This document shows, piece by piece, positions 5,206 through 56,901 of a DNA stretch of 64,000 bases (position 1 is the stretch's first letter; each line of letters begins with the position of its first letter). A program made the translations under genes and the position numbers. Below the pieces are notes generated by a model. The model searched no databases. It was not told the origin of the DNA and saw only the letters and a program-made list of their open reading frames with translations. This DNA is from Mizuhopecten yessoensis (Eukaryota): positions 2,633,212 through 2,697,211 of the forward strand of contig NW_018408761.1 of the NCBI RefSeq assembly GCF_002113885.1, read 5' to 3'.

Positions 5206-6284
5206 GATTTCATATCCTTCTCCGTGTCAGCCATATACTTCCTCGGGCTGATATGATACGGAGTAAGATATGAAAATGGTCATATGGAAACCTTTTTTTC
5301 AAAAACTGCTCTATAACATCCAAAATATTAGAAATAACATATAAAGCTAGCAGAAAATTATATTTCATGAGCTTCACCAACATCACATTCTACCTTAAAG
5401 AAAACAAAATAAACGGAATAGCAAACACAGGTGGATTATTGCAATGTGGACACTACCAGTTTGAGGTGTGATTTTTCTGAAAAGTGTTGAACCGGAAGTT
5501 AACCGATTATGGCGCGACCCGGGCGGATAGGGATTGGTCCGGGTTATGACCTATTTACAGCTAGCAGTATCACACATGCAAAGCAACCCATATCACGGAC
5601 AAGTGTATGTTAAATACCATTTCATTCCTCTTGGTATCACTCCTAAACGTACTTTAACTCGAACAAGATACACTTGTTGGCAGCAAGATGCCTGCTGTCA
5701 CCGGGGACATGATGACGTCATAGTGATGGATTCGATGCCAACTCGGCTGGCATTGCATATACGTTTTGGAAGTAATTTTGTTTTGAGGTCCAATGCGTTT
5801 TTACTTAATGCGTCTCTCATTTGTTTAGCAATACACATTTCTAAGTAGATTTCTCTGTTCCTCAGTTATCAAATTTGCGCTCAAAATCAGCTTAATTGCT
5901 TTTAAATCAATGAATGAAATGTAAAGTTGTATCTACTTTTCAAATCTAACATGGCATTGTTTCAAATTTTTTCACGCGTTTTTCATAGTTTCTACAACAG
6001 TATCTTTATTTCTTGTGGGTACCAGTAATTACAATATAAAAATACAGATTCTAATCAACTGGAATACTGTTCGACTATTGGATATTATAACTACACTGAA
6101 GGGACTTCATTTCTATCGATTTCAAATGCAATGCACTTGATTTATGACTTATAATTAAATAATGAGCACATGGTGTGGTAGCTGATGTAGAGCACGTACG
6201 TGTTAAGTGAATCAGGTGGAAGCTCGCTTCTTACACAAATATAACTCCCGTGTCTTGTTTTATATAATTGGTACAATAGTGTCG

Positions 6285-32567: not shown

Positions 32568-32618
32568 ATGTTCGTGAAAGATTTTAGAAAGGGGTTTTAT
32601 GATGTCGTGCAAAATCAT
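32568..32618 (+). CDS. CDC45: CDC45 exon 1 (MFVKDFRKGFYDVVQNH)
   Basis: Matches the CDC45 N-terminus; gtgagt donor. Confidence 0.95.
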
Positions 32619-35600
32619 GTGAGTATCTCATTTATTCTATGTATCTTATCAGATCTGTTCTTACTTTACTCTCACATAAACTCATCATATAGTATTAGCC
32701 TGATCTGTTTGTTGATAAATAATATAAATAATAACGTAATAATATTGACAATGATCAGATGATCTGATGATTTTGTACAGTATTTTTCATATAAATACAC
32801 TTATTTTTTTACAGTGTTTAGATTCTGTTATCGTAGTTGGTGTGTTGATTATTTTGATATCTCAAGTTAGTTCAGATTAGGCTAGACTTACAAAAGTAAG
32901 TATATTTACCGATTCAGAATTTGATAATACCACGGCACAGGAGCCTAAAGTTCTGTCAATAATGAATAATAACAGTAATGCAAACAAAATACCTATAATA
33001 TGCTTAAAAAATAGCATATTATAGGTATTTTGTTTGTATTACTGTTATTATTCATTATTGACAGAACTTCAGGCTCCTCTGAAAATACTGCTTTCAGAAT
33101 GAGATAAGATAAACATTATTTAAAGTCGGCTAGTCGAGGAATAACAATTGAACATTAAGACCAACATAACATAAGTCCGCTCTGGGAAGTATGGCAGCAC
33201 CTCCGTTTTGGAACATTATTTAACTTGTCCTGTTGGAAGTTCAGATGTCCGAACGAGCCCTGCCATGGGCCGAAGCCAGATAGATACATGAATTACCATA
33301 TTTCAGATGTTGGATCAATTGAAATATAGATGTGCAACTATACTAAAGTTGTTTCTTATTTATTTTTATAAAGTAGAATGTACTGTCATGATGGTGGTGG
33401 GACCATGCATGTATTCACAACTCTAATACTAGATCTATGTATACGTAATTAAGCTTAGAAGCTTCTACCACCAATAGCTTCGTCGTTAATTCAGATTGCA
33501 TTGTCTGAAAGTGAATGTTAGAAGCAAGGAAAACTAGAGACACGTGCAGACACATAATAATGTAAGGGCATAGGTTGATTGGGTGAAAATAAAAATAAAA
33601 TGATGAGTGAAATTTGCAATCAGACTCGACTTATTGCTATGCCAGGAACATAACATGGTAAGGAATTATATTCAAGGTAATTATATAATGAATGTATAAT
33701 ATAATATATATTATGATAGGGAAAACTGAGACTGGTGGATAAGGTTAACAAAGCTTATATATAATTACTGCATTGTTATCCCCCGCTTTCACCGAAACGG
33801 GGATATTAATTTGGGTTTGTCTGTCTGTCACACTTCGTTTCCGTGCAATAAATATAACTGCAACAAATGTTAACCCATTTTCTTCAAACTTGTTAACAGG
33901 TTTAAATGCCGTAAGGGCTCGACCAAGTTCGATGACTACTTTCAGCGGACTGTATTTGGCGGAGTTATGGCCCCTTTAATAACGAAACATAACCACTTTC
34001 AGCAGACTTTATTTGGCGGAGCTCGAGTTATATGGCCCCTTGAATAACGAAAAACATCATTATCTGCCGTTTCCTTGCAATAACTGCAACAAATGTTAAC
34101 CGATTTTCTTCAAACTTGGTATCATGGTTAAATGCCTTAAGGGCTCGGCCAAGTTTGACAACCACTTAAATCAGACTCCATTTGGCAGAGTTATGGCCCC
34201 TTGAATAACGAAAAACATCATTATCTGCCGTTTCTGTGCAACAAATGTTAACCGATTTTCTTCAAACTTGGTAACAGGGTTAAATGCCTTAATTATAAGG
34301 GCTCGGTCAAGTTTGACAACCACTTAAATCAGACTCCATTTGGCAGAGTTATGGCCCCTTGTTTAACAGAAAACATCATTATTTGCAGTTTCTGTATGTT
34401 TTTTTCAAGCTATACGTGATATTATGTCTCAACAGCACAATACTCACATGTTTAAAACTAACCTCAATAATGTTTACCTACAATATGTCCTGCAATCAGG
34501 GGATATAAATTCCATGAATTTGCTTGCTTATATATATATATTTTTTTATGACCATTCTATTTTCACAGAGAGTCCTGGTTCTTGTTGCCTTTGATGTTGA
34601 TGCTCTATGTGCGTGCAAGATACTTCAGGTAAATATGATCACAGGCTAGGGGTGTAAAAATCCACTAGCTGATGCCCGGGGCTACCAGATTTTCAGTTTG
34701 GGCTAGTGAAATTTAGAGGCTTATATTACTATAGCCCGGGGCTAGTGACTTTTTTAGGTTGTCATAATATAACTAACAAAAGTGCTTCTGTTCTATTCTA
34801 TCATCATGAGAGTAACCATTCAACATTTTAGCCTATAAATTCCTGGTAATTTTCACTACAATACCTATCAGAACACATGCAGTCATTCACGCCGCATTGT
34901 TTATGCAAGACATTCTGTTGCCTTTCACGTGTGCTATGTCAGGATGTGTGATAGTAGGCACTATTCACATCCTAAATAGCATTGAAAGTCTATACTAACC
35001 ACCAAATTGGCCCTCTTTGTTGCAAATCATTCTCTTTTATTTGATTTAAGCATGAATATGTGGGGTACAGAAATAAAGTTCATCTCTCCAAAAGTCGCAA
35101 GTCTGCCATGTTTGTTTTCTAATACTGAAACTGGGATCTGGACTGATTTTCAGGAAGAGTAAAATAAAAATCGCTAATATTGGTTTAAGTTTCAGTAACT
35201 TTTAAGGCATTCAATTATTAAAAAATATATAATATTATTTATTATTTAAGGAAAACATATTCATCTGTGAATGAGATATAGATTGTGTGATCATGTTGTC
35301 AGCTTGATCCATCTTTGAATGAGATATAGATTGTGTGATCATGTTGTCAGCTTGATCCATCTGTGAATGAGATATATATTGTGTGATCATGTTGTCAGCT
35401 TGATCCATCTGTGAATGAGATATAGATTGTGTGATCATGTTGTCAGCTTGATCCATTTTGTATTTGTCGGGCTAGCAGAATTTTATTTCGGGCCAGTGGA
35501 TTATTAGTGTCTATAAGCTGCTAGCCCGGGGCTAGTATTCTGAAAAACACTTTTACACCCCTGGATGATACTTTTGTATGAGAAAACGGTATTGCCTTTC

Positions 35601-38600
35601 ATATATAATATCATTGGACAGTAGTCTAAAACCTTTAAAAATTTACAAAATCATCAGAAACAGTATTTCAGTTAAAAAAAAAAAAAGATTATTATATATA
35701 TGAGTCAAAATGAATGATGATTTAAAGTGATTTGTAACACATGTTACCAAAATCTTATTGCAGGTCATAAATACAAAGCCTTTGAAAGGTACTGGTTTTC
35801 AATACATTTGCCGACTTCTGTTTACCGGACGGTATGAAATACATACAATTTATTACATTGTTGTGCACACAATATGCACCACAAAGTAATAAGGATGTAA
35901 TTATAATCGTTTACAATGTTATATCAGTGTGTCCCTATAATGTAATCAATATGAGTTGTGAAATTGTTTGTTTTTATTTCAGATTCCATCAAATATTTCA
36001 ATGTTTGTTATATTTTAAAACATCTTCATTTTTGATTTCAGTGTTTGTTCCAGAGCGACCAAATACTTTACACCATAGTACCGGTGTCTGGACGTGAGGA
36101 GTTGGAGCGTGCATATGTAGAGAATTCTGAAGGGGTAACTTGTTCATAGCTTTACTTAGTTTATTCTGAATGCAGACATATCTGTCTCTATATTCAGATC
36201 ATACTCCATATTATTACTCAACATAATAAATGTTCATAAGGCGGAATAATATTAAACTTGCATTGGTTCTCAGCCCAGCTCACATTGTTTATTTTTTTAT
36301 TGAAGGAGATTGGGGTTCTCCCTCAATTCCTCCTCATTACCTATACTGGTTCAATAAAATGAAAAATAAAATTGTCTAAAATAGTAAATATAAGAAAATG
36401 AACACTAGGTAGGCACTTGACTTACTTTGGTAGACAGGGAAGCAGAAATTGTATAATTGAAATTCTATCTCCAGTATTAATACTGAATTATTTACGGATG
36501 TACACCCATACCCTTTCTGCCATCTCTTCACACACATGGTTAGTAACATATACTGGTAAATATTCTGATAGTATTCTAATTTATTAATTGTGACCATTTA
36601 ACTGAAATTTTGATATCCAGTAAACAAATTGTTATTCTATTAACTTAAGTCTTCTTTGATGTTAACATAAATCTATGAATTATAATTAAATACCTTTGAT
36701 CCTGCCTTTGCTTCCATCGACTTACCTTCGACCCCTCTCCGCAGACTCCCTGTGTAATTGATCTTTATCTTAATACAATATTGCAGATCAAGCATGTATT
36801 GATGATCAACTGTGGGGGGACGATAGATGTGGTAGAGACCCTACAGCCTGAGGAATGTGTCCGCTTCTACATCTGTGACAGGTAAGGTATTACTAATGTG
36901 ACAGGTAAGGTATTACCACTGAAGAATGTGTTCGCAGACACAGTGGATTTTACTTACACCTAAGGTTAACTCATTGTCTGCTATGTTTGATAATCCTTGC
37001 TTGTGCTGATTTTGCTCTTAAAATTATTAAAAATTACATGTGTTTTGTAAATATAAGAGCAAATTCTTCTTTCTTCTTCTTCCTTCTTGGGGTCTGGACT
37101 TGGTCCGCCCAAGTACGGGAGTAGACTCCTGTAATAGGAATGTAAAACGTCCGGAACTGTGCGCTATGTACAATTTTGAATGGACTTAAAATTTTATATT
37201 AAGATATGTTACTCTCATATAATATGTGAATACATTAATAAAATGAAAACATTGAAGATTAACAACATTTTAACATATATACAATTTGTACAGTGGCCTT
37301 GTGGATTAGTATAGTGATTTGACCCCTTCAATAGTTATAAGTGGAGATGCCACTTTTGAAGGATTCAAGGGAAGAAGTCATGCACATAGATTCTGGTAGG
37401 GTAATCCAGTCTGTTATTGTCTAAAGTCTAAATTACATCACCATCGACCATTTATGTGTTTTGTCTTGTTAGAATCCAAGACAGAATTCACATCACATAA
37501 GGTTTATAATTGTTTCGCTATGGGAATTTTACAGTTTCCGTGGCAGTTATTCAACACATGTTGATAGACCTAATTATAAACATATAAATGTGTGTGTAAT
37601 ATTGACAAACAGAATCCAATCATAGATACATGTAAATCCCTGGTTGTTACGTATATCAATCTCTGTTCTGTACCAGTCACCGTCCAGTCGACATACACAA
37701 CATATATAATGCTGTCCAAGTCAAACTGTTGATGAAGGAGGATGAGTTTGAAGAGCTTCCAGAGTATGACCAAGTCTTCAGAGATGAGGTAGGTATCAAT
37801 CTAAAGTTTAAGAAATAATAATATAATATAAAAGAAATTATTTGACATTCATTATTGAATTGTAGGGGCTTTTTTATGCATATTAAAAAACTGTCAGTTA
37901 TATCACAAGCAATTATTTAGTAAATTAAACACAAGCTAATGTAATCTAGCGCTTCTAGAAAAAACGCATATATCACGAAATGGTTATTGAGCAAAGCTAA
38001 TGCCACACAGTGCTGTTAGAAAAAGCTTACATATGTCAACCTTCATTAAAGGAATAAGACATATTTCTGTAAGTATCTTAACACAATAGATACTGTATAG
38101 CACTACTTTATATGATTCTCATGATCTTGTCTGTAAGCATGAGATAAGGCTGTTCAGATCACCATATATCTGGTCAGTCATCCAGATGTAAATAATTCTT
38201 GATGTTATATATCAAAGAGTGCTGAACAGATCTTTATGAAATTTCATACATAGGTTTTCCTTGTTTTTTAGTTGTGCATGTTTAATTTTGAGACTGATCA
38301 CAAGTTTGGTATATCAAGATCACATACTGATGAATCAATAAAGCCCTAACACATGTCTATTTATTGGAATCTAGTCTGACGATGAATCTGGTAACGAGAG
38401 TGATGACTCCGAGAAGTCTGGGAAGAGAAGAAGGTATGATGATGACTACCTGGAAAGAAAACGACAGAAGCGATTATGGAACGAGGAAAGGTAATCTTAT
38501 TTCATCAGAAAACATATACTGTGCTTCCTGGTATTTAGCCAAAGAATAATGACTTGCATTTAATAGTCAATGCTAGTAATATGACACCATTACTTGATAA

Positions 38601-41600
38601 TAAGGTGAAGTAAAATGAATTTTATAGTACTTCATACCATAGGGCAGAGAATGGACTAATCAAAAACCTTAAAAATACCTTAAAAGACAACAGGTTTGCT
38701 TTGGTCCACACCTCTATTTTGGCTTGATTGACCTGTTATCTGTCTCTGTGGTATACTGGTTATACTACAATAATTTTTTTTTCAAATTTCCAAGATGTAA
38801 ACTTTTAAAGTAATGCTAATTAGTATTTGGACTTAAGTGTTTCAACTTCTTAACATTATACATTGTTTGGTTTCAGGTCCAAGTTGTTATTTGAATATTC
38901 TCAATTTTCTACCTATGGAACAGCAGTAAGTATATAAATGAAGATGTTAAGAAGCTAATCAAAAATGTAACAAAGTATGTTTTTACTTAATATTTGTATT
39001 ATAACAATGAACATATAGCAAACCCTGTTTGATACAATTAGCCAAGTAGCACAAGTTGCACTCTGCTAATTAATGCTATGACCAGATGTGTACTGACTTT
39101 AAAGACACATTTCAGATTACTTACAAAATTAACTATTCTATTCAAATAAATAGTATTATAGAGCAGCCTACATCTTATTCTTGTTGGTTAAAAAACAGCT
39201 GAGTGGATTTTGATTGAACTCGGGTAGGCCTAAAATCTGAACTTGAATTATTCAAAATCCTACTTTTCCAAATTTGGTCTGAAATATCAGTAGGATAAGG
39301 TGATCAGATCGTGGTTTGTAAAACTGAAGTTTGTGTGACGGGCCAAACATAGGAATTTTGAAAGATTTACAAGCTACTTAAAAAAATATTCAGATCCCAT
39401 GTTATATAATCACTTCCTAATCATGATTTTATGATAAAGATATCCTCAAACAAATCATTGCCTTGCATGAAGAGGAAAGTGCTATCATGGTACCAATGTT
39501 TGTTCCTGGGTCAGCCTTGCCCTGGTGACTTAGTCCGAGGCATGACATTTGTACCAGTTCTTTTTGATTATTTTGTGTTGAAACTTCTCGGGGAATGTGA
39601 GTGCAAAGGAGAAGATTAATAGTGTCACAAAGGAATACTTAGCATTTCTGTTACCTGTTTGGTGTGCAAAGCATAAAAATATCAAAATTTGGCATATATT
39701 TCCCTAATTTAATCATTTTTAGCTCACCTGGCACACATTTTTAGCTCACCTGGCACAAAAGGCCATGTGAGCTTATGCTGTACTGCGGCCTCCGTCGTCC
39801 GTCAGTCAACTTTTTATTTTGAACGGCTTTTTCTTATTAAAATGACCTTGACCTTTCAAGGTCACAGGAGTCAAATATGTTAAAAACTTCAAACAACAAT
39901 ATCCTATAAGAACCATTTGGACTAGAGTCATGATACCCGGGTATGTTATGTAGACCAGCAGTGCAAACCTATTTCTTTATTACAGTTATGAGACCAAAGG
40001 TCAACTTTAAGTGCTAGTCGGGGGTCAAACGTAAACATGGGTTAAAAGCTTTAACAATCTTCTCAAGTTCAATAAGGCCAAGGGCCATGACATTTGGCCA
40101 GTAGGGACCGGAGATGGAGTGCTATACAATTTCCTCATTTAAATGACCTTGACCTACTTTCAAGGTCACAGGGGTAAATTATGTTAAAAACTTAAAACAA
40201 CAACATCCTATAAGAACCATTATACCTGAGTATGCAATGTAGACCAGCAGAGCAAATATTTTTCTTCATAACAGTAATGAGGTCAAAGGTCAACTTTAAG
40301 TGCTAGTCGGGGGTCAAACGTTCAACATTGGTTAAAAGCTTTAAAATCAAAATTTGAAATTTCAAACAATATCTTTAGAAACCTTTAAGAGATGTTAAAA
40401 TGTGTTGTGTATTAAATAGTTACCAAATTTGGTCTGAAGTTACCTATATGTCGGTTTCATGTAACAAAAGAAACAGGTAAATGATACAGGCCCTCTTGAC
40501 CTCTTGTTAATGTACAGTCCATACATTAAATGCTAACTATTGTGATGAAATAAAGCTTGGTATTAATCCAAGGAATAATTTAAGTTGTATGTTATATGTA
40601 TTTTGTATTTTTAGCCATTATTAACACTTTATTTTTCTTGTAGGCAGCCTTGCTTATATTTGAATTGGCCTGGAAAATGTCCAAAGACACCAATGACCTT
40701 TTATGGTAAGTAGAGCCTGCGTGTAACAGTGTGTGTGCAATGTAAAGCTGTTATGAAAGATTTAATTGTTAGACGTCACTACAAATTGCTACTTTTCAGG
40801 GATGTTATTCTTCCTCTTTTCAGAAGATTTCCTCTTTTCCCCTACTTTCATACGAGGATTTTAAATCTTGTTGATTTTTTCTGATACAATGATAATCGAT
40901 TCATAAAGATTAGGTGTGTTCCTCTGCTTTCATTTTGCTTTCCTCCTTTTTTCCCTCAATCACATTCCTGTTATATATATATAATCAGATGGCAAGAAGA
41001 ATAACCCCATTTCTGCTAGAAATTCATGCAGTCATTTCTGTCCTTTGAGCGTCCAGACCTTGAACATGTTGGTTGAGTGACAGATGCTCTTGAACAATGA
41101 CCATCTGATTATGTCAAGACTCTGGGCATTAAGTATTTATGCATATATATATCCTGGAAGAGACTGGCAAGAACATACAGATAATTTGTTTTGTAGGTTG
41201 TCTATCTTGGGAGTGACTGACCAGTACATTCATTACAAAACACCAAGGGACAAATACATAGATGATGTGATGGCTCTACAGTCCCATGTGTCTCGCCACA
41301 ACCACAGGTGAGTTATCATGTGTTCAATAATTTACATACATCTGCTTTATTCAAAGGTACTAAGTGAGAAATACACAGGCCAGATTATAGGTCACGCAAA
41401 ACATTAGTGGCTGCCCCATCCTTTGACGTAGATGAGAACTCAAAACAGTGTTTTATAGTGTTTTGCTTTATGGCCATTAAGTTACATTGTGTAGATTTAA
41501 CACCTGTGAAACTGTTGACCACAGATAATGTATCCTGACTTCAGACATTCATCCTATCTAATAGATTATGTTTTATTAACACTTTTCGTGATGGTGGATT

Positions 41601-44600
41601 TAGTTTGCATTGATTGATCTTTATCATTCTTTTAAAATAAGCTCAACTGACCCTATTTAAGATAATTTTATATTATATTGACCTCATGCAATTTGAAAAT
41701 TAATGCAATATCTAGTTATTTTGTCAAGAACATACTCCCGGAGTGCTTGTTCTATAGCTTTATGTTTACTTGTCAGAGATGACGAAGACAACATCCTATC
41801 TGTGAACTGTCTCAAGATCTCCTTTGACGAAGAGCTCCAGCTACCGTTGTATCGACACTGGTCGTTGTTCGAAAGCATCTGTCACTCAACCAACATGGCC
41901 TGCAAGTTCAAGGTCTGGACGCTCAAAGGACAGAAACGACTGCATGAATTTCTAGCAGAAATGGGGTAATTCTTCTTGTCGTCTGATTATGTCAAGACCC
42001 TGGGCATTAAGTATTTGCTGTCATACATGTCATTGTTTTCAGTTGGCCAAAATTAAGAAAACTCTCAAGCTTGAAAGAAAATATTTTCAGAGCTAAAAAT
42101 CTGACATCAATAAATACTCCCATTTGACATCCTGGTTTAAAGAGCAAATGCTGCAAAAAATTCTTATGGAGATGTGTTCAGTTGGAGATCTCCCTTTTGG
42201 AGGTTTCATATGTTGACGGGTACGGCGGCTTTCATTGATATGTCTGTACATTGGACAATCGGGTTAAACTTTCAGATACATCTTGAGGAATACATCAAAT
42301 GTAGGTCACTGTGACCTATGTTTTAGGCTTCACTGATAAGTTTGCATTCAACTCCTTTCCTTTTTTTTATGCCTCCGCCATAAAATGGGGGGGGGGGGGG
42401 GGGCATATAGTGTTGCCCATGTCTGTCCCGTCCGTTAGGCATCAAACACTGAAACTAATTTCACATGGTGAGGGGACATTCATGTCTTAAAGACATTTTC
42501 TAGTTTTACTTTATATTCAGCTCCATGTTCATCTGAGAGATGGAATATATATGCTTTAAAATTGTTTTCTAGTTGCTTAATAGAATGAAAAAAACTTCCG
42601 AGACTTATTTCATAAATATCATCCATGACCTTTTATATTTCACAATATTTTCCAGGAATAAGGAAATATATGCAAAACTTTTTTGTACAATAAATGACAT
42701 GAAGTCAATATTATTTCAGGATGCCTCTTACACAGTGTAAACAGAAGTATGCTGCAATGGATTCCAGTGTGAGGAATAATGTGAAACCCCTGATCCAGGA
42801 CCACATGGCCAAATATGGGTAACTGGGACCCTTATCTCTTAACTCTTATATCAGGATGATCTGTTGTATTAAAAAGATTCTTGCTATCTTTACATCAGAG
42901 TTACTCAAGACTCAAGTGTATATAAGTTTTTAAAGGGTTATTACTCTTAAAGAAAGTATGTATGATTAATTAAAAAGCATGTACATCCTTAATTTTTAGC
43001 ACAACTCACGGGTATAATGTGCACAGTAGCATAGATTTTTTACTCTTACATAAATCAAATGCGTAAGGTAGCATGCATCCTTAAGTGTATCACAAATCAA
43101 AGGTAAAATGTGTAAGATAAAAGCTCTATTTGAAAGAAATTCTACTTGTACTTGATATGCCTATGTATAATGATACTGTAAAGCTTTGTATGTGCCATGT
43201 TTCCATTGTGTCTGACAGGCTGGTGCCTCAAGATGTAGTGTTTCCCTCCTTCTTTGCCCAGTACGGATACAAAAACAAGCTCTGTGCCACAGATGTTGTC
43301 CTTGGGTGTGTGTCCACACTGGAGTCTATTGTAAGTACTATGGGGTGTTTAGGAGTGCTCCAAACACCTAAATCAGTATGTTGTCCTTGGGTGTGTCCAC
43401 ACTGGAGTCTGTTGTTAGTCCTATGGGCTCCAAACACCTAAATCAGTATGAAAATCAAGGGCAGGAGAACTGTTTCAGTTTTGCTCTACAATGTTAAAAA
43501 CAGATATTCAAATTAATAGCTGTTGGCATCCTTAGTATGATTTACAGTTCAAAATATTCCTTCGGTCTGCAGGAAGCTTCCGTTTTCCTGTTCAGTCACA
43601 TAACATTTGAGTTTTGGGGGCAAATTTAGGGAAAGTTTAGTCTAATTCTTCATTTAGAAATAGTGTTTTGTTATTATAAACTCAAAAAGCTCTCCAGTGA
43701 CATATTTTTGCAGCTTTAATATTTATTTTCTGATTACAGATTTTCCAATTCATTATTACTCATTATGAGATCGCTATTGGTTACTATTACAATGACATCT
43801 ATTTACAGTTTACTGTTGTTCTGATTTAGGAAAAGGGAAAGAGTCCGACCGACCATTTCCTAAATGCACTGGATGTCTTACAGAGGTAAGGAACATATAG
43901 CTCCAGGTGTCGTTAAGTTTCCCAGGATTCTAATTTTTCTTTTTCTATTTAATTGTGCAATATTTTTATCCCTATTAATATTTGAGCTTTACAGCATTAA
44001 CATACATAGCCAAAAATGATGCTACAATGTCATGACTTTGCAGCAATTGTGGTGTATACTCTTTTTCTGACCTTATTTGTTGATTAAGGCAGTGCAGAGT
44101 TATTTTCCATTATATTTATGTTATTTGTTCCAAACTCTTACAAAACAGTTTTAGTTTGCACCCTCTTATTAGGGGTTATAATATTTTGAAAATTTTCTCA
44201 GTGATGTTTCTGAAAAGTACTTACAAATATATGACCAAAGGTGCATTAGATAAGCTCCTTTTATTACAATCATGTTATGAAGGGTTCGACTCCTTTTAGC
44301 AGAGATGTTTTTTATGAAGTAAACAAAAATGTAATAAATAATTGTTTGTGTACAACTCTTTGCATAGTAATAGGCAAGCAGCTCCAGATCAGAAAAATGC
44401 CAAACAAAATGGAAGTTTTTTTCTTTGGAGATTTAGTTTAGAGTAAATGGACTCTCTTCCTTAAGCTGATACAAAATTAATTGATGGACTGCTATAAATG
44501 TTGATAAACTGCTGTTGTAATTTTGTAATTATATTTGTGATTGTCCTGATTAACTTGTGTTGTACTTGAAACTTTCAGGGGAAATGTGATTGCCATGGAG

Positions 44601-46064
44601 AAGTCTCTAGTTTGTGCCAAGACTCAGGTACAGGCTCTCGTCACACAGGTCCGCACCTTCCTGGACATGCACCAAGTGATCTCCGCTGGACCCTTCCTCT
44701 ATGCCTTCATACAAGAGGTATGTCTCCCCTTAATTTTTTACAAACTCTTGACTTTTCTGATTTCACATTTTCCACTTCCCAAACTTTACTGTACTGATTG
44801 CATCAAACTTTGGCAGGAAGCATAAGTTTATATTGACTTGTCTTCGCGTGCAGGGTACAGCAGATGTGAAGTATTTCTCCACGCCCCAGTGTCTGATGAG
44901 GCTGGCCCGGTTTACACAGGAGGCTCACTGCTCGGTGGTAAGTATACATACCCTGGTCAGTATCTACAACACTAATTTCAGTGTCATTCAGGGATATTAA
45001 CCAGATATTAGACACCTTGGCGGGGGGTCTGAATCACTATGTCCTTGTTTGTTGTTGTTTTTGTCAGGCACGTCACTTTTCATTGTCTATGCATGTATAT
45101 TGAAATGTAATATTGATAAAATAACCAGGTGGTTATATGAAAAGGTAGTAGTATGAAGACAGTTGGATGCCAATTAATTTATTGAGCTTTATTGGCATTA
45201 AAACCAAATATACATGTTCTGGGATTGTAAAAATTGCTGTCGGAAAATATACAAAAAAACCCCTCAAATTTTGCTTATATTTTTCAAAACTTGTGTGATT
45301 TTTTTCTCACCAAAATTTCATGAATCTGAAGGCATGATAAAACTGGATTAATGACTTCACACCTACCCTTGTTCTAATATTGTAACCCCTTTGTGCTGTA
45401 TTTATCAGAGTCGTAACAAGCGAGCCCGGTCGATGCCGCTTGTGTTGGGAGCCCCTTTAGACAGTGAACAGGGTACAACTCTTGTGATTGGTATCCCACC
45501 CCTACAGCTCGATGACGAGAGGAAAAAGTAAGTATGGCACTCTTATGACTTTAGAACAGGATAAATAAACCCAGGTCTGTGAGAGTTGGAAAAATACCAA
45601 TCGAGATCGTATGTTCCATAATTTCATAGACCATTCAACTGTACATTGTTGTACATGATAATTTGAATGCCATGCTGTAGATTTGATGTTCACAGCTAAG
45701 TTTTGTATTTGTAGCTTCTTTGGGAAAGCGTTTGAACAAGCAGCCGTGGGTTCCAATGCTCGAACTTTACTGGACAGCTTTGACACTTTTAGTAAGTATT
45801 TGAAAACCTGTTAATAATAACTGTACCTATTGACTATGAATGACAACAGGTCCTGCACTTAAAACGTTACATCTTGTATTTTTTTCAAGGTCATGTTTCT
45901 ATCAATAAAAACGTCATGTTATTGCTCTTTTGCCTCCATTTGTGGTCAGATTGTATAACTCATCCTATTTGTGTGAACATTTTTTTTTTTCCATTTCAGT
46001 TGTGGAAATGAAGACAGAAGACAAGAGCAAGTTCTTTGATGCCCTGATTAGTTTACTGCAGTAA
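32568..46064 (+). CDS. CDC45: Cell division control protein 45 (CMG helicase subunit); complete 18-exon gene, 1689 nt, 562 aa
   Basis: Exons: 32568-32618, 34569-34628, 36042-36134, 36787-36881, 37677-37788, 38375-38490, 38877-38925, 40644-40705, 41197-41307, 41777-41965, 42720-42818, 43219-43330, 43830-43885, 44579-44717, 44854-44937, 45409-45527, 45715-45791, 46000-46064. All junctions GT-AG with consistent phases. Motifs MFVKDFRK, DVDALCACKIL, INCGG, DSHRP, HVSRHNHR, LYRHWSL, EFLAEMG, GPFLY, NFFGKAFE, KFFDALISLL. Confidence 0.97.
32939..33078. repeat. Near-perfect fold-back palindrome (66-bp arms, 8-nt loop) in CDC45 intron 1
   Basis: 32939-33004 is the reverse complement of 33013-33078 with 2 mismatches. 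Confidence 0.92.
33773..34526 (+). mobile_element. Non-autonomous Helentron-like element (DINE-1/HINE architecture) with ~155-160-bp internal tandem repeats
   Basis: 5' TATCCCCC with nearby inverted GGGGATA, then (GTCT)n, internal repeats (GAGTTATGGCCCCTT x4), and a 3' GGGGATAT followed by hairpin AAATTC-CAT-GAATTT. Confidence 0.72.
34569..34628 (+). CDS. CDC45: CDC45 exon 2 (RVLVLVAFDVDALCACKILQ)
   Basis: Conserved DVDALCA motif. Confidence 0.96.
34647..35563. mobile_element. hAT-like non-autonomous TIR element carrying 4 x 48-bp tandem repeats (35263-35454)
   Basis: Termini TAGGGGTGTAAAA ... TTTTACACCCCTG; subterminal GCCCGGGGCTA motifs at both ends; no clear target-site duplication. Confidence 0.68.
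36042..36134 (+). CDS. CDC45: CDC45 exon 3
   Basis: CLFQSDQILYTIVPVSGREELE matches LFxxDxxxYTxVPVSG. Confidence 0.94.
36787..36881 (+). CDS. CDC45: CDC45 exon 4
   Basis: IKHVLMINCGGTIDVVETLQPEE...FYICD. Confidence 0.94.
37677..37788 (+). CDS. CDC45: CDC45 exon 5
   Basis: HRPVDIHNIYN...VFRDE. Confidence 0.94.
38375..38490 (+). CDS. CDC45: CDC45 exon 6 (acidic loop and basic NLS-like stretch)
   Basis: SDDESGNESDDSEKSGKRRR...RLWNEER. Confidence 0.9.
38877..38925 (+). CDS. CDC45: CDC45 exon 7
   Basis: SKLLFEYSQFSTYGTA. Confidence 0.92.
39714..40508 (+). mobile_element. Non-autonomous Helentron-like element (HINE) in CDC45 intron 7, with ~300-bp internal duplication and a duplicated 5' end
   Basis: TTTTAGCTCACCTGG...CCATGTGAGCT, then CCGTCGTCCGTC; AAATGACCTTGACCT at ~39840 and 40141; 3' CAGGTAAATGATACAGGCCCTCTTGACCTCTTGTT. 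Confidence 0.75.
40644..40705 (+). CDS. CDC45: CDC45 exon 8
   Basis: AALLIFELAWKMSKDTNDLLW. Confidence 0.95.
40981..41138 (-). repeat. Templated insertion in CDC45 intron 8: inverted copy of 41859-41990 followed by a direct copy of 41982-42016
   Basis: Hand alignment: 123 nt with 7 mismatches and one 9-nt deletion (inverted part), then 34/35 identity (direct part). Confidence 0.93.
41197..41307 (+). CDS. CDC45: CDC45 exon 9
   Basis: LSILGVTDQ...LQSHVSRHNHR. Confidence 0.95.
41777..41965 (+). CDS. CDC45: CDC45 exon 10
   Basis: DDEDNILSVNC...LYRHWSLFES...GQKRLHEFLAEMG. Confidence 0.96.
42362..42505 (+). mobile_element. Short HINE-like remnant with a poly-G run
   Basis: TTTTATGCCTCC...GGGGCATA, GTCTGTCCCGTCCGT, and a 3' GGGGACAT followed by hairpin ATGTCT-TAA-AGACAT and TTCTAGTT. 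Confidence 0.6.
42720..42818 (+). CDS. CDC45: CDC45 exon 11
   Basis: MPLTQCKQKYAAMD...KYG. Confidence 0.94.
43219..43330 (+). CDS. CDC45: CDC45 exon 12
   Basis: ...FFAQYGYKNKLCATDVV...LES. Confidence 0.93.
43830..43885 (+). CDS. CDC45: CDC45 exon 13
   Basis: EKGKSPTDHFLNALDVLQR. Confidence 0.92.
44579..44717 (+). CDS. CDC45: CDC45 exon 14
   Basis: ...QVISAGPFLYAFIQE. Confidence 0.94.
44854..44937 (+). CDS. CDC45: CDC45 exon 15
   Basis: GTADVKYFSTPQCL... Confidence 0.92.
45409..45527 (+). CDS. CDC45: CDC45 exon 16
   Basis: ...MPLVLGAPL...GTTLVIGIPP...RK. Confidence 0.94.
45715..45791 (+). CDS. CDC45: CDC45 exon 17
   Basis: FFGKAFEQAA...FD. Confidence 0.95.
46000..46064 (+). CDS. CDC45: CDC45 exon 18 (coding end)
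   Basis: VEMKTEDKSKFFDALISLLQ* with TAA stop. Confidence 0.95.

Positions 46065-53211: not shown

Positions 53212-56901
<3,690 letters not shown>

What the first reader, a model, noticed from the sequence alone, without database searches (positions are those of the whole stretch)
40981..42016. CDC45 intron 8 carries an antisense copy of exon 10 and its splice donor: a built-in ~120-bp pre-mRNA duplex
Seen: 40981-41103 is the reverse complement of 41859-41990 (last 107 nt of exon 10, its donor and 25 nt of intron 10), with 7 mismatches and one 9-nt deletion. It is followed immediately by a direct copy (41104-41138, 34/35) of 41982-42016. The insert has 12-bp inverted ends (ATAATCAGATGG / CCATCTGATTAT) and sits between two (TA)n runs. 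Four of the 7 substitutions are CpG transitions, and four leave G-U wobble pairs. One leaves an A:C mismatch at exon position 41873 (third base of a GAA codon). Established: long intramolecular duplexes can mask splice sites, promote exon skipping or back-splicing, and serve as editing-complementary sequences for ADAR, which favours A:C mismatches. Inference: a template-switch repair insertion made a hairpin that loops out exon 9 and buries the exon 10 donor. Skipping exons 9+10 (300 nt, phase 2 to phase 2) would be in frame, giving a possible new isoform or regulatory switch in an essential replication gene.
Basis: partly seen in the sequence, partly recalled or inferred. Interest (0 to 1): 0.82.

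Follow-up and report, generated by a model that had tools for sequence, protein, structure and literature searches.

The report
Inverted exon-10 copy inside CDC45 intron
A mollusc CDC45 gene carries, in intron 8, a unique 158-base patch copied (mostly backwards) from its own exon 10 and intron 10; it is real and could pair with exon 10 in the pre-mRNA, but it looks like a young repair/replication scar and nothing shows that it has a function.

Summary
40981-41103 is the reverse complement of 41859-41990, with 7 substitutions and one 9-nt deletion. 41104-41138 is a 34/35 direct copy of 41982-42016. The exon numbering, exon sizes (111 + 189 nt) and phases are also as stated.

The patch has no other copy in the 988-Mb genome. 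The two other hairpin repeats in the window belong to multicopy MITE-like families. It sits in a (TA)n microsatellite, with about 3 nt of microhomology at the left junction.

The copy has decayed. It has lost 4 of 5 CpGs, gained a stop codon, changed a conserved Glu to Lys and lost 9 nt. So it is neither an assembly artefact nor brand new.

Four related bivalve-like CDC45 loci with 5-6 kb of upstream sequence, and a fifth with only about 290 nt upstream of exon 10, have no second copy of exon 10. They are distant relatives (72-78% exon identity).

In silico the arms form a 122-bp duplex (-211 kcal/mol) that buries the exon 10 donor. Deaminase-domain (A_deamin) genes are present.

There is no sign of selection on the pairing and no transcript data.

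Best reading: a lineage-specific templated insertion, with an untested effect on RNA.

The parts
40644..40705 (+). CDC45 coding exon 8 (ends in phase 2, TG|)
   Evidence: tblastn with full-length CDC45 representatives and splice-site reading; conserved in related loci
40972..40983 (.). left (TA)6 run; its last 3 nt (ATA) overlap the start of the inverted copy (junction microhomology)
40981..41103 (-). inverted copy of 41859-41990 (last 107 nt of exon 10, donor, 25 nt of intron 10). It has 7 substitutions and a 9-nt deletion. Read on the minus strand it is a decayed exon-10 fragment with a TGA stop
   Evidence: the Pfam CDC45 model hits it on the minus strand (positions 315-352, 1 TGA)
41104..41138 (+). 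direct copy (34/35) of intron-10 sequence 41982-42016, joined without microhomology to the inverted segment
41143..41152 (.). right (AT)5 run, 4 nt after the end of the patch
41197..41307 (+). CDC45 exon 9 (111 nt), inside the loop of the predicted duplex
41777..41965 (+). CDC45 exon 10 (189 nt); Pfam CDC45 positions 289-351, 64 bits
41859..41990 (+). source of the inverted segment and 3' arm of the predicted pre-mRNA duplex; includes the exon 10 donor at 41966-41967
41982..42016 (+). source of the direct segment; overlaps the other source by 9 nt (41982-41990)

Best explanation
The 158-nt patch at 40981-41138 is a lineage-specific templated insertion, that is filler DNA made by template switching during break repair or replication. 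It filled a lesion in a (TA)n microsatellite of CDC45 intron 8. The polymerase copied 132 nt of the + strand backwards (41990 to 41859). It then switched to the other template strand and copied 35 nt forwards (41982 to 42016). It then rejoined the intron. An equivalent two-step history is a direct 158-nt copy followed by an in-place inversion by a single four-point template switch; this would also give the 9-nt overlap and the short inverted ends. Since then the copy has drifted as non-coding, probably methylated, DNA. As a by-product the pre-mRNA contains two arms that can form a 122-bp near-perfect duplex. This duplex loops out exon 9 and covers the exon 10 donor. Most likely this is neutral or slightly harmful and is tolerated, because splicing and helicases outrun or undo the pairing. 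In the fraction of transcripts where it does form, promiscuous A-to-I editing of both arms is the most probable consequence; 32 A lie in the exon arm and 22 would recode. Shown here: the structure, its uniqueness, the decay of the copy, its absence in distant relatives, and the in-silico duplex. Inferred: the repair mechanism, neutrality, and editing.
For: The two segments of opposite orientation and their junctions are. The left junction shares ATA with the (TA)n run; the other two junctions are blunt. The patch is unique in the 988-Mb genome, while the other two inverted repeats of the window are multicopy MITE-like families. The decay points from exon to copy. CpG count is 5 in the source and 1 in the copy. 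CGA became TGA, and GAA (Glu) became AAG (Lys), at residues conserved in relatives. The 9 nt missing from the copy encode Ala-Cys-Lys, and Ala-Cys-Lys/Arg is present at that place in the four closest of the relatives listed. No second copy of exon 10 exists in L006, L008, L010 and L012 (5-6 kb upstream examined), nor in L009 (only about 290 nt upstream held). The window has no N, so no assembly gap is nearby. The duplex is -211 kcal/mol and is present in both the MFE and the centroid structure. Folding is 174 kcal/mol less favourable when the patch is forced unpaired. The donor is paired with p about 1. A_deamin domains occur on several contigs of the genome, and ADAR1/2 are described in bivalves (PMC6651903). 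Template switching is a documented source of new hairpins (PMC8794818, PMC10710096, PMC7954356).
Against: At 123 nt copied from 755 nt away, the event is larger and longer-range than the short-range template switches described so far. Those studies required a template within 100 nt (PMC7954356) or saw patterns up to 59 bp (PMC8794818). Two of the three junctions show no microhomology, so the repair pathway cannot be named. No close relative or second haplotype could be examined, so the date and fixation status are unknown. Neutrality is a default, not a result: 7 substitutions give no power to detect selection on the pairing. Survival of a 122-bp duplex over a donor site in an essential single-copy gene could also mean that it is used.
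Confidence: 0.65

Rival explanations
1. The patch is a functional cis-element. It would act as an editing-complementary sequence and/or a splice-site mask. It would make CDC45 isoforms lacking exon 9, 10 or both, or recoded exon 10, or an exon-9 circular RNA, or endo-siRNAs against CDC45, as a regulatory switch for a replication gene.
For: A very stable predicted duplex covers the donor. An A:C mismatch lies at 41873. All three possible skips keep the frame (111, 189 and 300 nt). Deaminase-domain genes are present. The copy has persisted long enough to collect about 6% divergence in a single-copy essential gene. Long-range pre-mRNA pairings can affect splicing (PMC2724269, PMC8052449).
Against: It is not conserved in any relative that could be reached. 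There is no excess of pairing-preserving changes (4 G-U against 2 mismatches among transitions, p = 0.34). The 9-nt bulge and 3 mismatches look like plain decay. The skipped 37-100 residues lie in the conserved core of CDC45 (Pfam positions 248-351), so the isoforms would probably be dead. The arms are 755 nt apart, which gives the spliceosome time to remove intron 8 first (inference; Eperon et al. 1988 as cited in PMC2724269). No transcript data were available.
Confidence: 0.1
2. The patch is an assembly or library artefact, such as a chimeric fold-back read or a mis-join. It would not exist in the animal.
For: The assembly is fragmented (82,659 contigs). Inverted chimeras are a known library artefact (own knowledge). 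An independent record of the junction ORF 41084-41308 was not found, although the tool may withhold records of this genome.
Against: The copy differs from its source by 7 substitutions and a 9-nt deletion, with a CpG-decay signature. An artefact would copy the source exactly. There is no gap or N in the window. The flanks on both sides are normal intron 8 sequence leading into exon 9.
Confidence: 0.05
3. The patch is a transposon-related insertion: a small TIR element or MITE with 12-bp terminal inverted repeats and a TA target site that captured host sequence. Alternatively it is a reverse-transcribed piece of unspliced CDC45 pre-mRNA inserted antisense.
For: It has 12-bp perfect inverted ends and TA-rich flanks. 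MITE-like palindromes are common in this genome. The copy contains intron sequence, so only DNA or unspliced RNA could be the template.
Against: There is no other copy in the genome. Homology to the source runs 26 nt beyond the right 'TIR', so the inverted ends are not the ends of the insert. There is no matching target-site duplication at the right edge, no poly(A) and no RT-type hallmarks. Nine of the 12 inverted-end bases are explained by the 9-nt overlap of the two copied segments.
Confidence: 0.04

Closest known systems
Template-switch mutations (four-point model) that create hairpins and de novo miRNA stems (PMC7954356, PMC8794818, PMC10710096)
   Same: One mutational event writes the reverse complement of nearby sequence into the same strand and creates a perfect stem at once. 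Mismatches accumulate afterwards. A 1-3-4-2 type switch reproduces the arrangement of inverted segment, 9-nt overlap and direct segment.
   Different: Here the copied stretch is 123 nt and its template lies 755-880 nt away. In those studies the switches span tens of bases and the template lies within about 100 nt. An extra jump back to the intron is needed, or a prior direct duplication.
Templated insertions / filler DNA at double-strand breaks (polymerase-theta-type end joining, foldback and MMBIR events; PMC11724301, PMC10622511)
   Same: A composite insert of several segments is copied from flanking DNA in both orientations. It sits at a break-prone AT microsatellite, with short or no microhomology at the junctions.
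   Different: Most experimentally seen inverted templated insertions are 5-34 bp (PMC11724301). This one is a germline, evolutionarily retained 158-nt event inside a gene. The enzymes involved cannot be inferred.
ADAR editing-complementary sequences (intronic ECS pairing with an exon, e.g. GluA2 Q/R site; own knowledge)
   Same: An intronic sequence is complementary to a coding exon of the same pre-mRNA, and an A:C mismatch is present.
   Different: Known ECS are conserved, usually short and imperfect, and direct site-selective editing. This duplex is long, near-perfect, unconserved and upstream of the exon, which predicts promiscuous hyper-editing if any. No editing has been shown.
Inverted-duplication model of hairpin small-RNA gene birth in plants (PMC3237417, bioRxiv 10.1101/682591)
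   Same: An inverted duplicate of part of a protein-coding gene creates a long hairpin with perfect complementarity to that gene.
   Different: There both arms are copies outside the parent gene. Here one arm is the working exon itself, inside the same transcript, in an animal. No small RNAs are known.
Experimental splice-site sequestration by inserted inverted exon copies (Solnick & Lee 1987; Eperon et al. 1988, cited in PMC2724269) and natural long-range pre-mRNA pairings (PMC2724269, PMC8052449)
   Same: The design is the one used in classic experiments: an antisense copy of an exon/donor placed in a neighbouring intron loops out an exon.
   Different: Natural regulatory pairings are conserved and usually 10-30 bp. 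This one is unconserved and 122 bp. The long 755-nt loop weakens the expected effect in vivo (own knowledge of Eperon 1988).

Membership tests
Template-switch / templated-insertion mutation | New sequence is the reverse complement (or a copy) of nearby sequence on the same chromosome | tested here: met
   the only other match in the genome is the source 755-880 nt downstream
Template-switch / templated-insertion mutation | Ancestral (outgroup) state lacks the new sequence | tested here: met
   L006, L008, L010 and L012 (5-6 kb upstream) and L009 (about 290 nt upstream) have one copy of exon 10 only.
Template-switch / templated-insertion mutation | Short-range: template within about 100 nt, the same-fork criterion of the pair-HMM study | tested here: not met
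   the template is 755-880 nt away; criterion from PMC7954356
Template-switch / templated-insertion mutation | Microhomology at the switch points | tested here: inconclusive
   3 nt (ATA) at the left junction and none at the middle and right junctions
MITE / TIR transposon | Multiple copies in the genome | tested here: not met
   no copy besides the source. Contrast for true MITE-like families
MITE / TIR transposon | Inverted repeats at the very ends, flanked by a target-site duplication | tested here: not met
   homology to the source continues 26 nt past the right inverted end; no TSD at 41138/41139
ADAR editing-complementary sequence | Intronic sequence forms a duplex with the edited exon | tested here: met
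   in silico only: 122 pairs, -211 kcal/mol
ADAR editing-complementary sequence | A-to-G differences between RNA and DNA at the exon | not testable with these tools
   no RNA-seq access
ADAR editing-complementary sequence | Conservation of the ECS across species | tested here: not met
   absent in all related loci reached
ADAR editing-complementary sequence | Editing enzyme encoded by the genome | tested here: inconclusive
   A_deamin (PF02137) occurs on several contigs, best 212 bits. dsRNA-binding domains were not checked, so ADAR versus ADAT/ADAD is not resolved. ADAR1/2 are reported in bivalves (PMC6651903)
Conserved regulatory long-range pre-mRNA structure | Complementary regions conserved, with compensatory substitutions | tested here: not met
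   not conserved. Changes are one-sided decay of the copy; 4 G-U against 2 mismatches among 6 transitions
CDC45 (Pfam PF02724) gene | Exons match the CDC45 profile in order on one strand | tested here: met
   exon 10 scores 64 bits. Exons 1-17 lie collinear at 32568-46043 on the + strand. It is the only such locus in the genome

The most novel reading that the evidence does not exclude
The inverted exon-10 copy has been co-opted. By pairing with exon 10 in nascent CDC45 pre-mRNA it would give condition-dependent (for example transcription-speed- or ADAR/helicase-dependent) exon skipping, recoding or endo-siRNA production. That would tune the dose of an essential replication-initiation factor, and would be a caught-in-the-act example of how an editing-complementary or splice-masking element is born from a single template-switch event.
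Probability: 0.07. Interest if true: 0.65.

Novelty: new member of a known kind. Interest (0 to 1): 0.3.

Why it matters
If it is only a scar, it is still a clean natural example of a long (123 nt), long-range (about 0.8 kb) templated inversion-insertion at a (TA)n tract in a germline. It is larger than the short-range template switches catalogued so far. It is also a natural version of the classic experiment in which an antisense exon copy is placed in an intron. It comes with precise, cheap predictions: clustered A-to-G changes across 41859-41965 and 40981-41103, exon 8-10, 9-11 or 8-11 junctions, an exon-9 back-splice, and 21-23-nt RNAs from both arms. If any of these is found, the locus would show how editing-complementary or splice-masking structures arise in one step. 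As it stands, it concerns one locus in one genome with no evidence of function.

Tried and rejected
1. MITE or transposon origin: rejected (unique in the genome; the inverted ends are not the borders of the insert).

2. Assembly artefact: judged unlikely because the copy is diverged and CpG-decayed.

3. Independent confirmation of the junction: I looked up the ORF 41084-41308, which spans it. It is not on record.

4. Close relatives: the protein searches with exon 10 alone returned only exon-sized fragments of 73-89% amino-acid identity. Their loci are 72-78% identical in exon DNA. That is too distant to date the insertion or to test fixation.

5. Selection on pairing: only 7 substitutions, so there is no power (p = 0.34).

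A literature search for the contig number found nothing (one search was a syntax slip).

7. Earlier notes of the scan by words: nothing similar.

8. Spliced CDC45 protein: I did not build or search one.

9. No contig looked human.
Full report
**Observation**

- The repeat finder reports two abutting inverted arms: 40981-41068/41903-41990 and 41065-41103/41859-41897.
- It also reports the direct pair 41104-41138/41982-42016 (34/35) and the 12-nt perfect inverted ends 40981-40992/41101-41112.
- A global alignment of 41859-41990 with the reverse complement of 40981-41103 has 7 substitutions and one 9-nt deletion, at 41897-41905 with placement ambiguous by one base.
- Four substitutions are CpG-to-TpG/CpA changes in the copy, at source positions 41864, 41871, 41937 and 41981.
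- In RNA, four substitutions leave G-U pairs (41864, 41871, 41979, 41981).
- Three leave mismatches: 41873 A:C, 41937 C:A and 41968 A:A.
- TA runs lie at 40972-40983 and 41143-41152.
- The window has no N.

**The gene**

Pfam CDC45 (PF02724) hits exon 10 at 64 bits. It is the only credible CDC45 locus in the genome. The other Pfam hits fall in model positions about 100-260 on other contigs and look like acidic low-complexity matches.

Full-length CDC45 representatives found with exon 10 alone align exon by exon to 32568-46043 on the + strand. Splice sites were read directly.
- The first coding exon is 32568-32618.
- Exon 8 is 40644-40705.
- Exon 9 is 41197-41307 (111 nt).
- Exon 10 is 41777-41965 (189 nt).
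- Exon 11 starts at 42720.

I add that exon 9 alone and exon 10 alone are also multiples of three, so any of the three skips keeps the frame.

No fetched contig looked human.

**What the patch is**

A DNA search of the whole assembly (988 Mb, 82,659 contigs) with 40981-41138 finds only the patch itself and its two source stretches.

The window holds only two other inverted repeats of 40 nt or more within 5 kb, at 32936-33081 and 54423-54556. Both belong to palindromic families with dozens of scored copies or more. The patch is thus not a mobile element. Homology to the source also runs 26 nt beyond the right-hand 'terminal' inverted repeat.

Nine of the 12 inverted-end bases follow simply from the fact that the two copied segments overlap by 9 nt in the source (41982-41990).

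**Direction and age**

The exon is the source and the intron patch is the copy.
- The copy turns a conserved Arg codon into TGA.
- It turns a conserved Glu into Lys.
- It lacks 9 nt that encode Ala-Cys-Lys. The four closest of the relatives listed have Ala-Cys-Lys/Arg at that place.
- The Pfam model still recognises the copy on the minus strand, with one stop.
- The source has 5 CpG and the copy has 1. This is the signature of methylated-CpG decay in unconstrained DNA. Gene-body methylation in bivalves is my own knowledge.

Divergence of about 5.7% (2.4% without CpG changes), plus an indel, rules out a chimeric-read artefact, which would be identical to its template. It also means that the insertion is not brand new. 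Given the high polymorphism of bivalves (own knowledge), I cannot say whether it is fixed.

**Relatives**

Exon 10 alone was used as the query. The best hits are exon-sized ORFs of 73-89% amino-acid identity from ENA and JGI assemblies.

Their loci are L006, L008, L010 and L012, with 5-6 kb on each side, and the short contigs L007, L009 and L011. They share exons 8-12 with the window at 70-82% DNA identity.

L006, L008, L010, L012 and L009 were searched for a second copy of their own exon 10 on either strand, and none has one. L009 holds only about 290 nt upstream of exon 10, so it says little about intron 8.

The patch is therefore not an ancestral feature of the gene. These relatives are too distant to date it. 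The tools may withhold nearer genomes, and an exact look-up of the junction-spanning ORF 41084-41308 found nothing.

**How it probably arose**

On the + strand the patch reads, in order:
- the reverse complement of 41990 to 41859;
- then 41982 to 42016;
- then, after 4 nt, the (AT)n continues.

The left junction shares ATA with the (TA)n run. The middle and right junctions are blunt.

Two histories fit.
- (a) A single repair or replication event at a break or stall in the (TA)n tract, with three template jumps.
- (b) A direct 158-nt templated copy followed by an in-place inversion through a single four-point template switch. Points 1 and 3 would lie at the start of the segment, point 2 at 41990 and point 4 at 41982. 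This automatically gives the 9-nt inverted overlap.

Both belong to the known class of template-switch or templated-insertion mutations (PMC7954356, PMC8794818, PMC11724301). The event is larger and longer-range than those usually catalogued. Those studies required a template within 100 nt, saw patterns up to 59 bp, or found 5-34 bp at yeast breaks (abstract). The pathway and enzymes are inferred, not shown.

**What it could do**

Folding 40950-42050 as RNA gives the long duplex in both the MFE and the centroid structure.
- It has 122 pairs from 40979:41992 to 41103:41859.
- The duplex energy is -211 kcal/mol.
- The fold is 174 kcal/mol less favourable when the patch is forced single-stranded.
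- Every base of the exon 10 donor region 41963-41971 is paired with probability above 0.93, except 41968, the third intron base (the A:A mismatch).
- The local folds of either arm alone are only -37 to -38 kcal/mol.

Whether it forms in vivo is open. The arms are 755 nt apart, and intron 8 may be removed before exon 10 is transcribed. Classic work found weak in-vivo effects of such hairpins with long loops (Eperon et al. 1988, cited in PMC2724269; content from my own knowledge). Later work shows that long-range pairings can matter (PMC2724269, PMC8052449).

The genome encodes A_deamin domains on several contigs, and bivalves have ADAR1 and ADAR2 (PMC6651903). If the duplex forms, promiscuous editing is the expected outcome. 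The exon arm has 32 A, of which 22 would recode.

**Evidence for function**

There is none.
- Among the six transitions, four leave G-U and two leave mismatches. The neutral expectation is one half, so the one-sided p is 0.34.
- The bulge and mismatches look like ordinary decay.
- The element is not conserved.
- The residues that skipping would remove lie in the conserved core of the Pfam model (positions 248-351).

The only weak argument for tolerance or use is that a 122-bp duplex over a donor site has survived for some time in a single-copy essential gene.

**Verdict**

The origin by template switching is well supported as a class. The functional reading is unsupported but not excluded. It is a new member of a known kind, of modest interest. 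It has cheap and decisive RNA-seq and PCR tests.

Noticed in passing
window 32936-33081 (CDC45 intron 1): Near-perfect palindrome (69-nt arms, 8-nt loop) that belongs to a multicopy MITE-like family. About 40 other loci scored at 82-94% identity (each matching on both strands), with 247 first-look candidates.
   Followed up: partly
window 54423-54556: A 47-nt perfect inverted repeat with a 40-nt loop. It is a member of a second, larger palindromic MITE-like family (1413 first-look candidates). Several copies carry the same ~35-nt longer variant at 80% identity.
   Followed up: partly
G000 contig C76735, about 72-181 kb (outside the window): A cluster of at least five or six A_deamin (ADAR/ADAD-type deaminase) domain copies lies on one contig. 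Further loci lie on C5459, C1154/C81141, C5518 and C696. This may be a lineage-specific expansion of the deaminase family.
   Followed up: no
L008:5277-5310 and 5479-5512: In one related CDC45 locus, the first 34 nt of intron 10, just after the exon 10 donor, have an 88% inverted match 170 nt downstream. This is a local intron-10 hairpin next to the same donor and is unrelated in sequence to the window's patch.
   Followed up: no
window 41104-41138 and 41982-42016: The 35-nt direct repeats flank exons 9 and 10. Recombination or slippage between them would delete both exons at the DNA level, leaving an in-frame gene. The inverted arms could likewise invert exon 9. Both are possible sources of null alleles.
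   Followed up: no
window 32568-32618: The CDC45 start codon and first coding exon (17 residues, donor GTGAGT) were found here.
   Followed up: partly
G000:C4282:135559-135840 (-) and other contigs: Pfam CDC45 hits are confined to model positions about 100-260 on unrelated contigs. They are most likely acidic low-complexity matches, not CDC45 paralogues.
   Followed up: no
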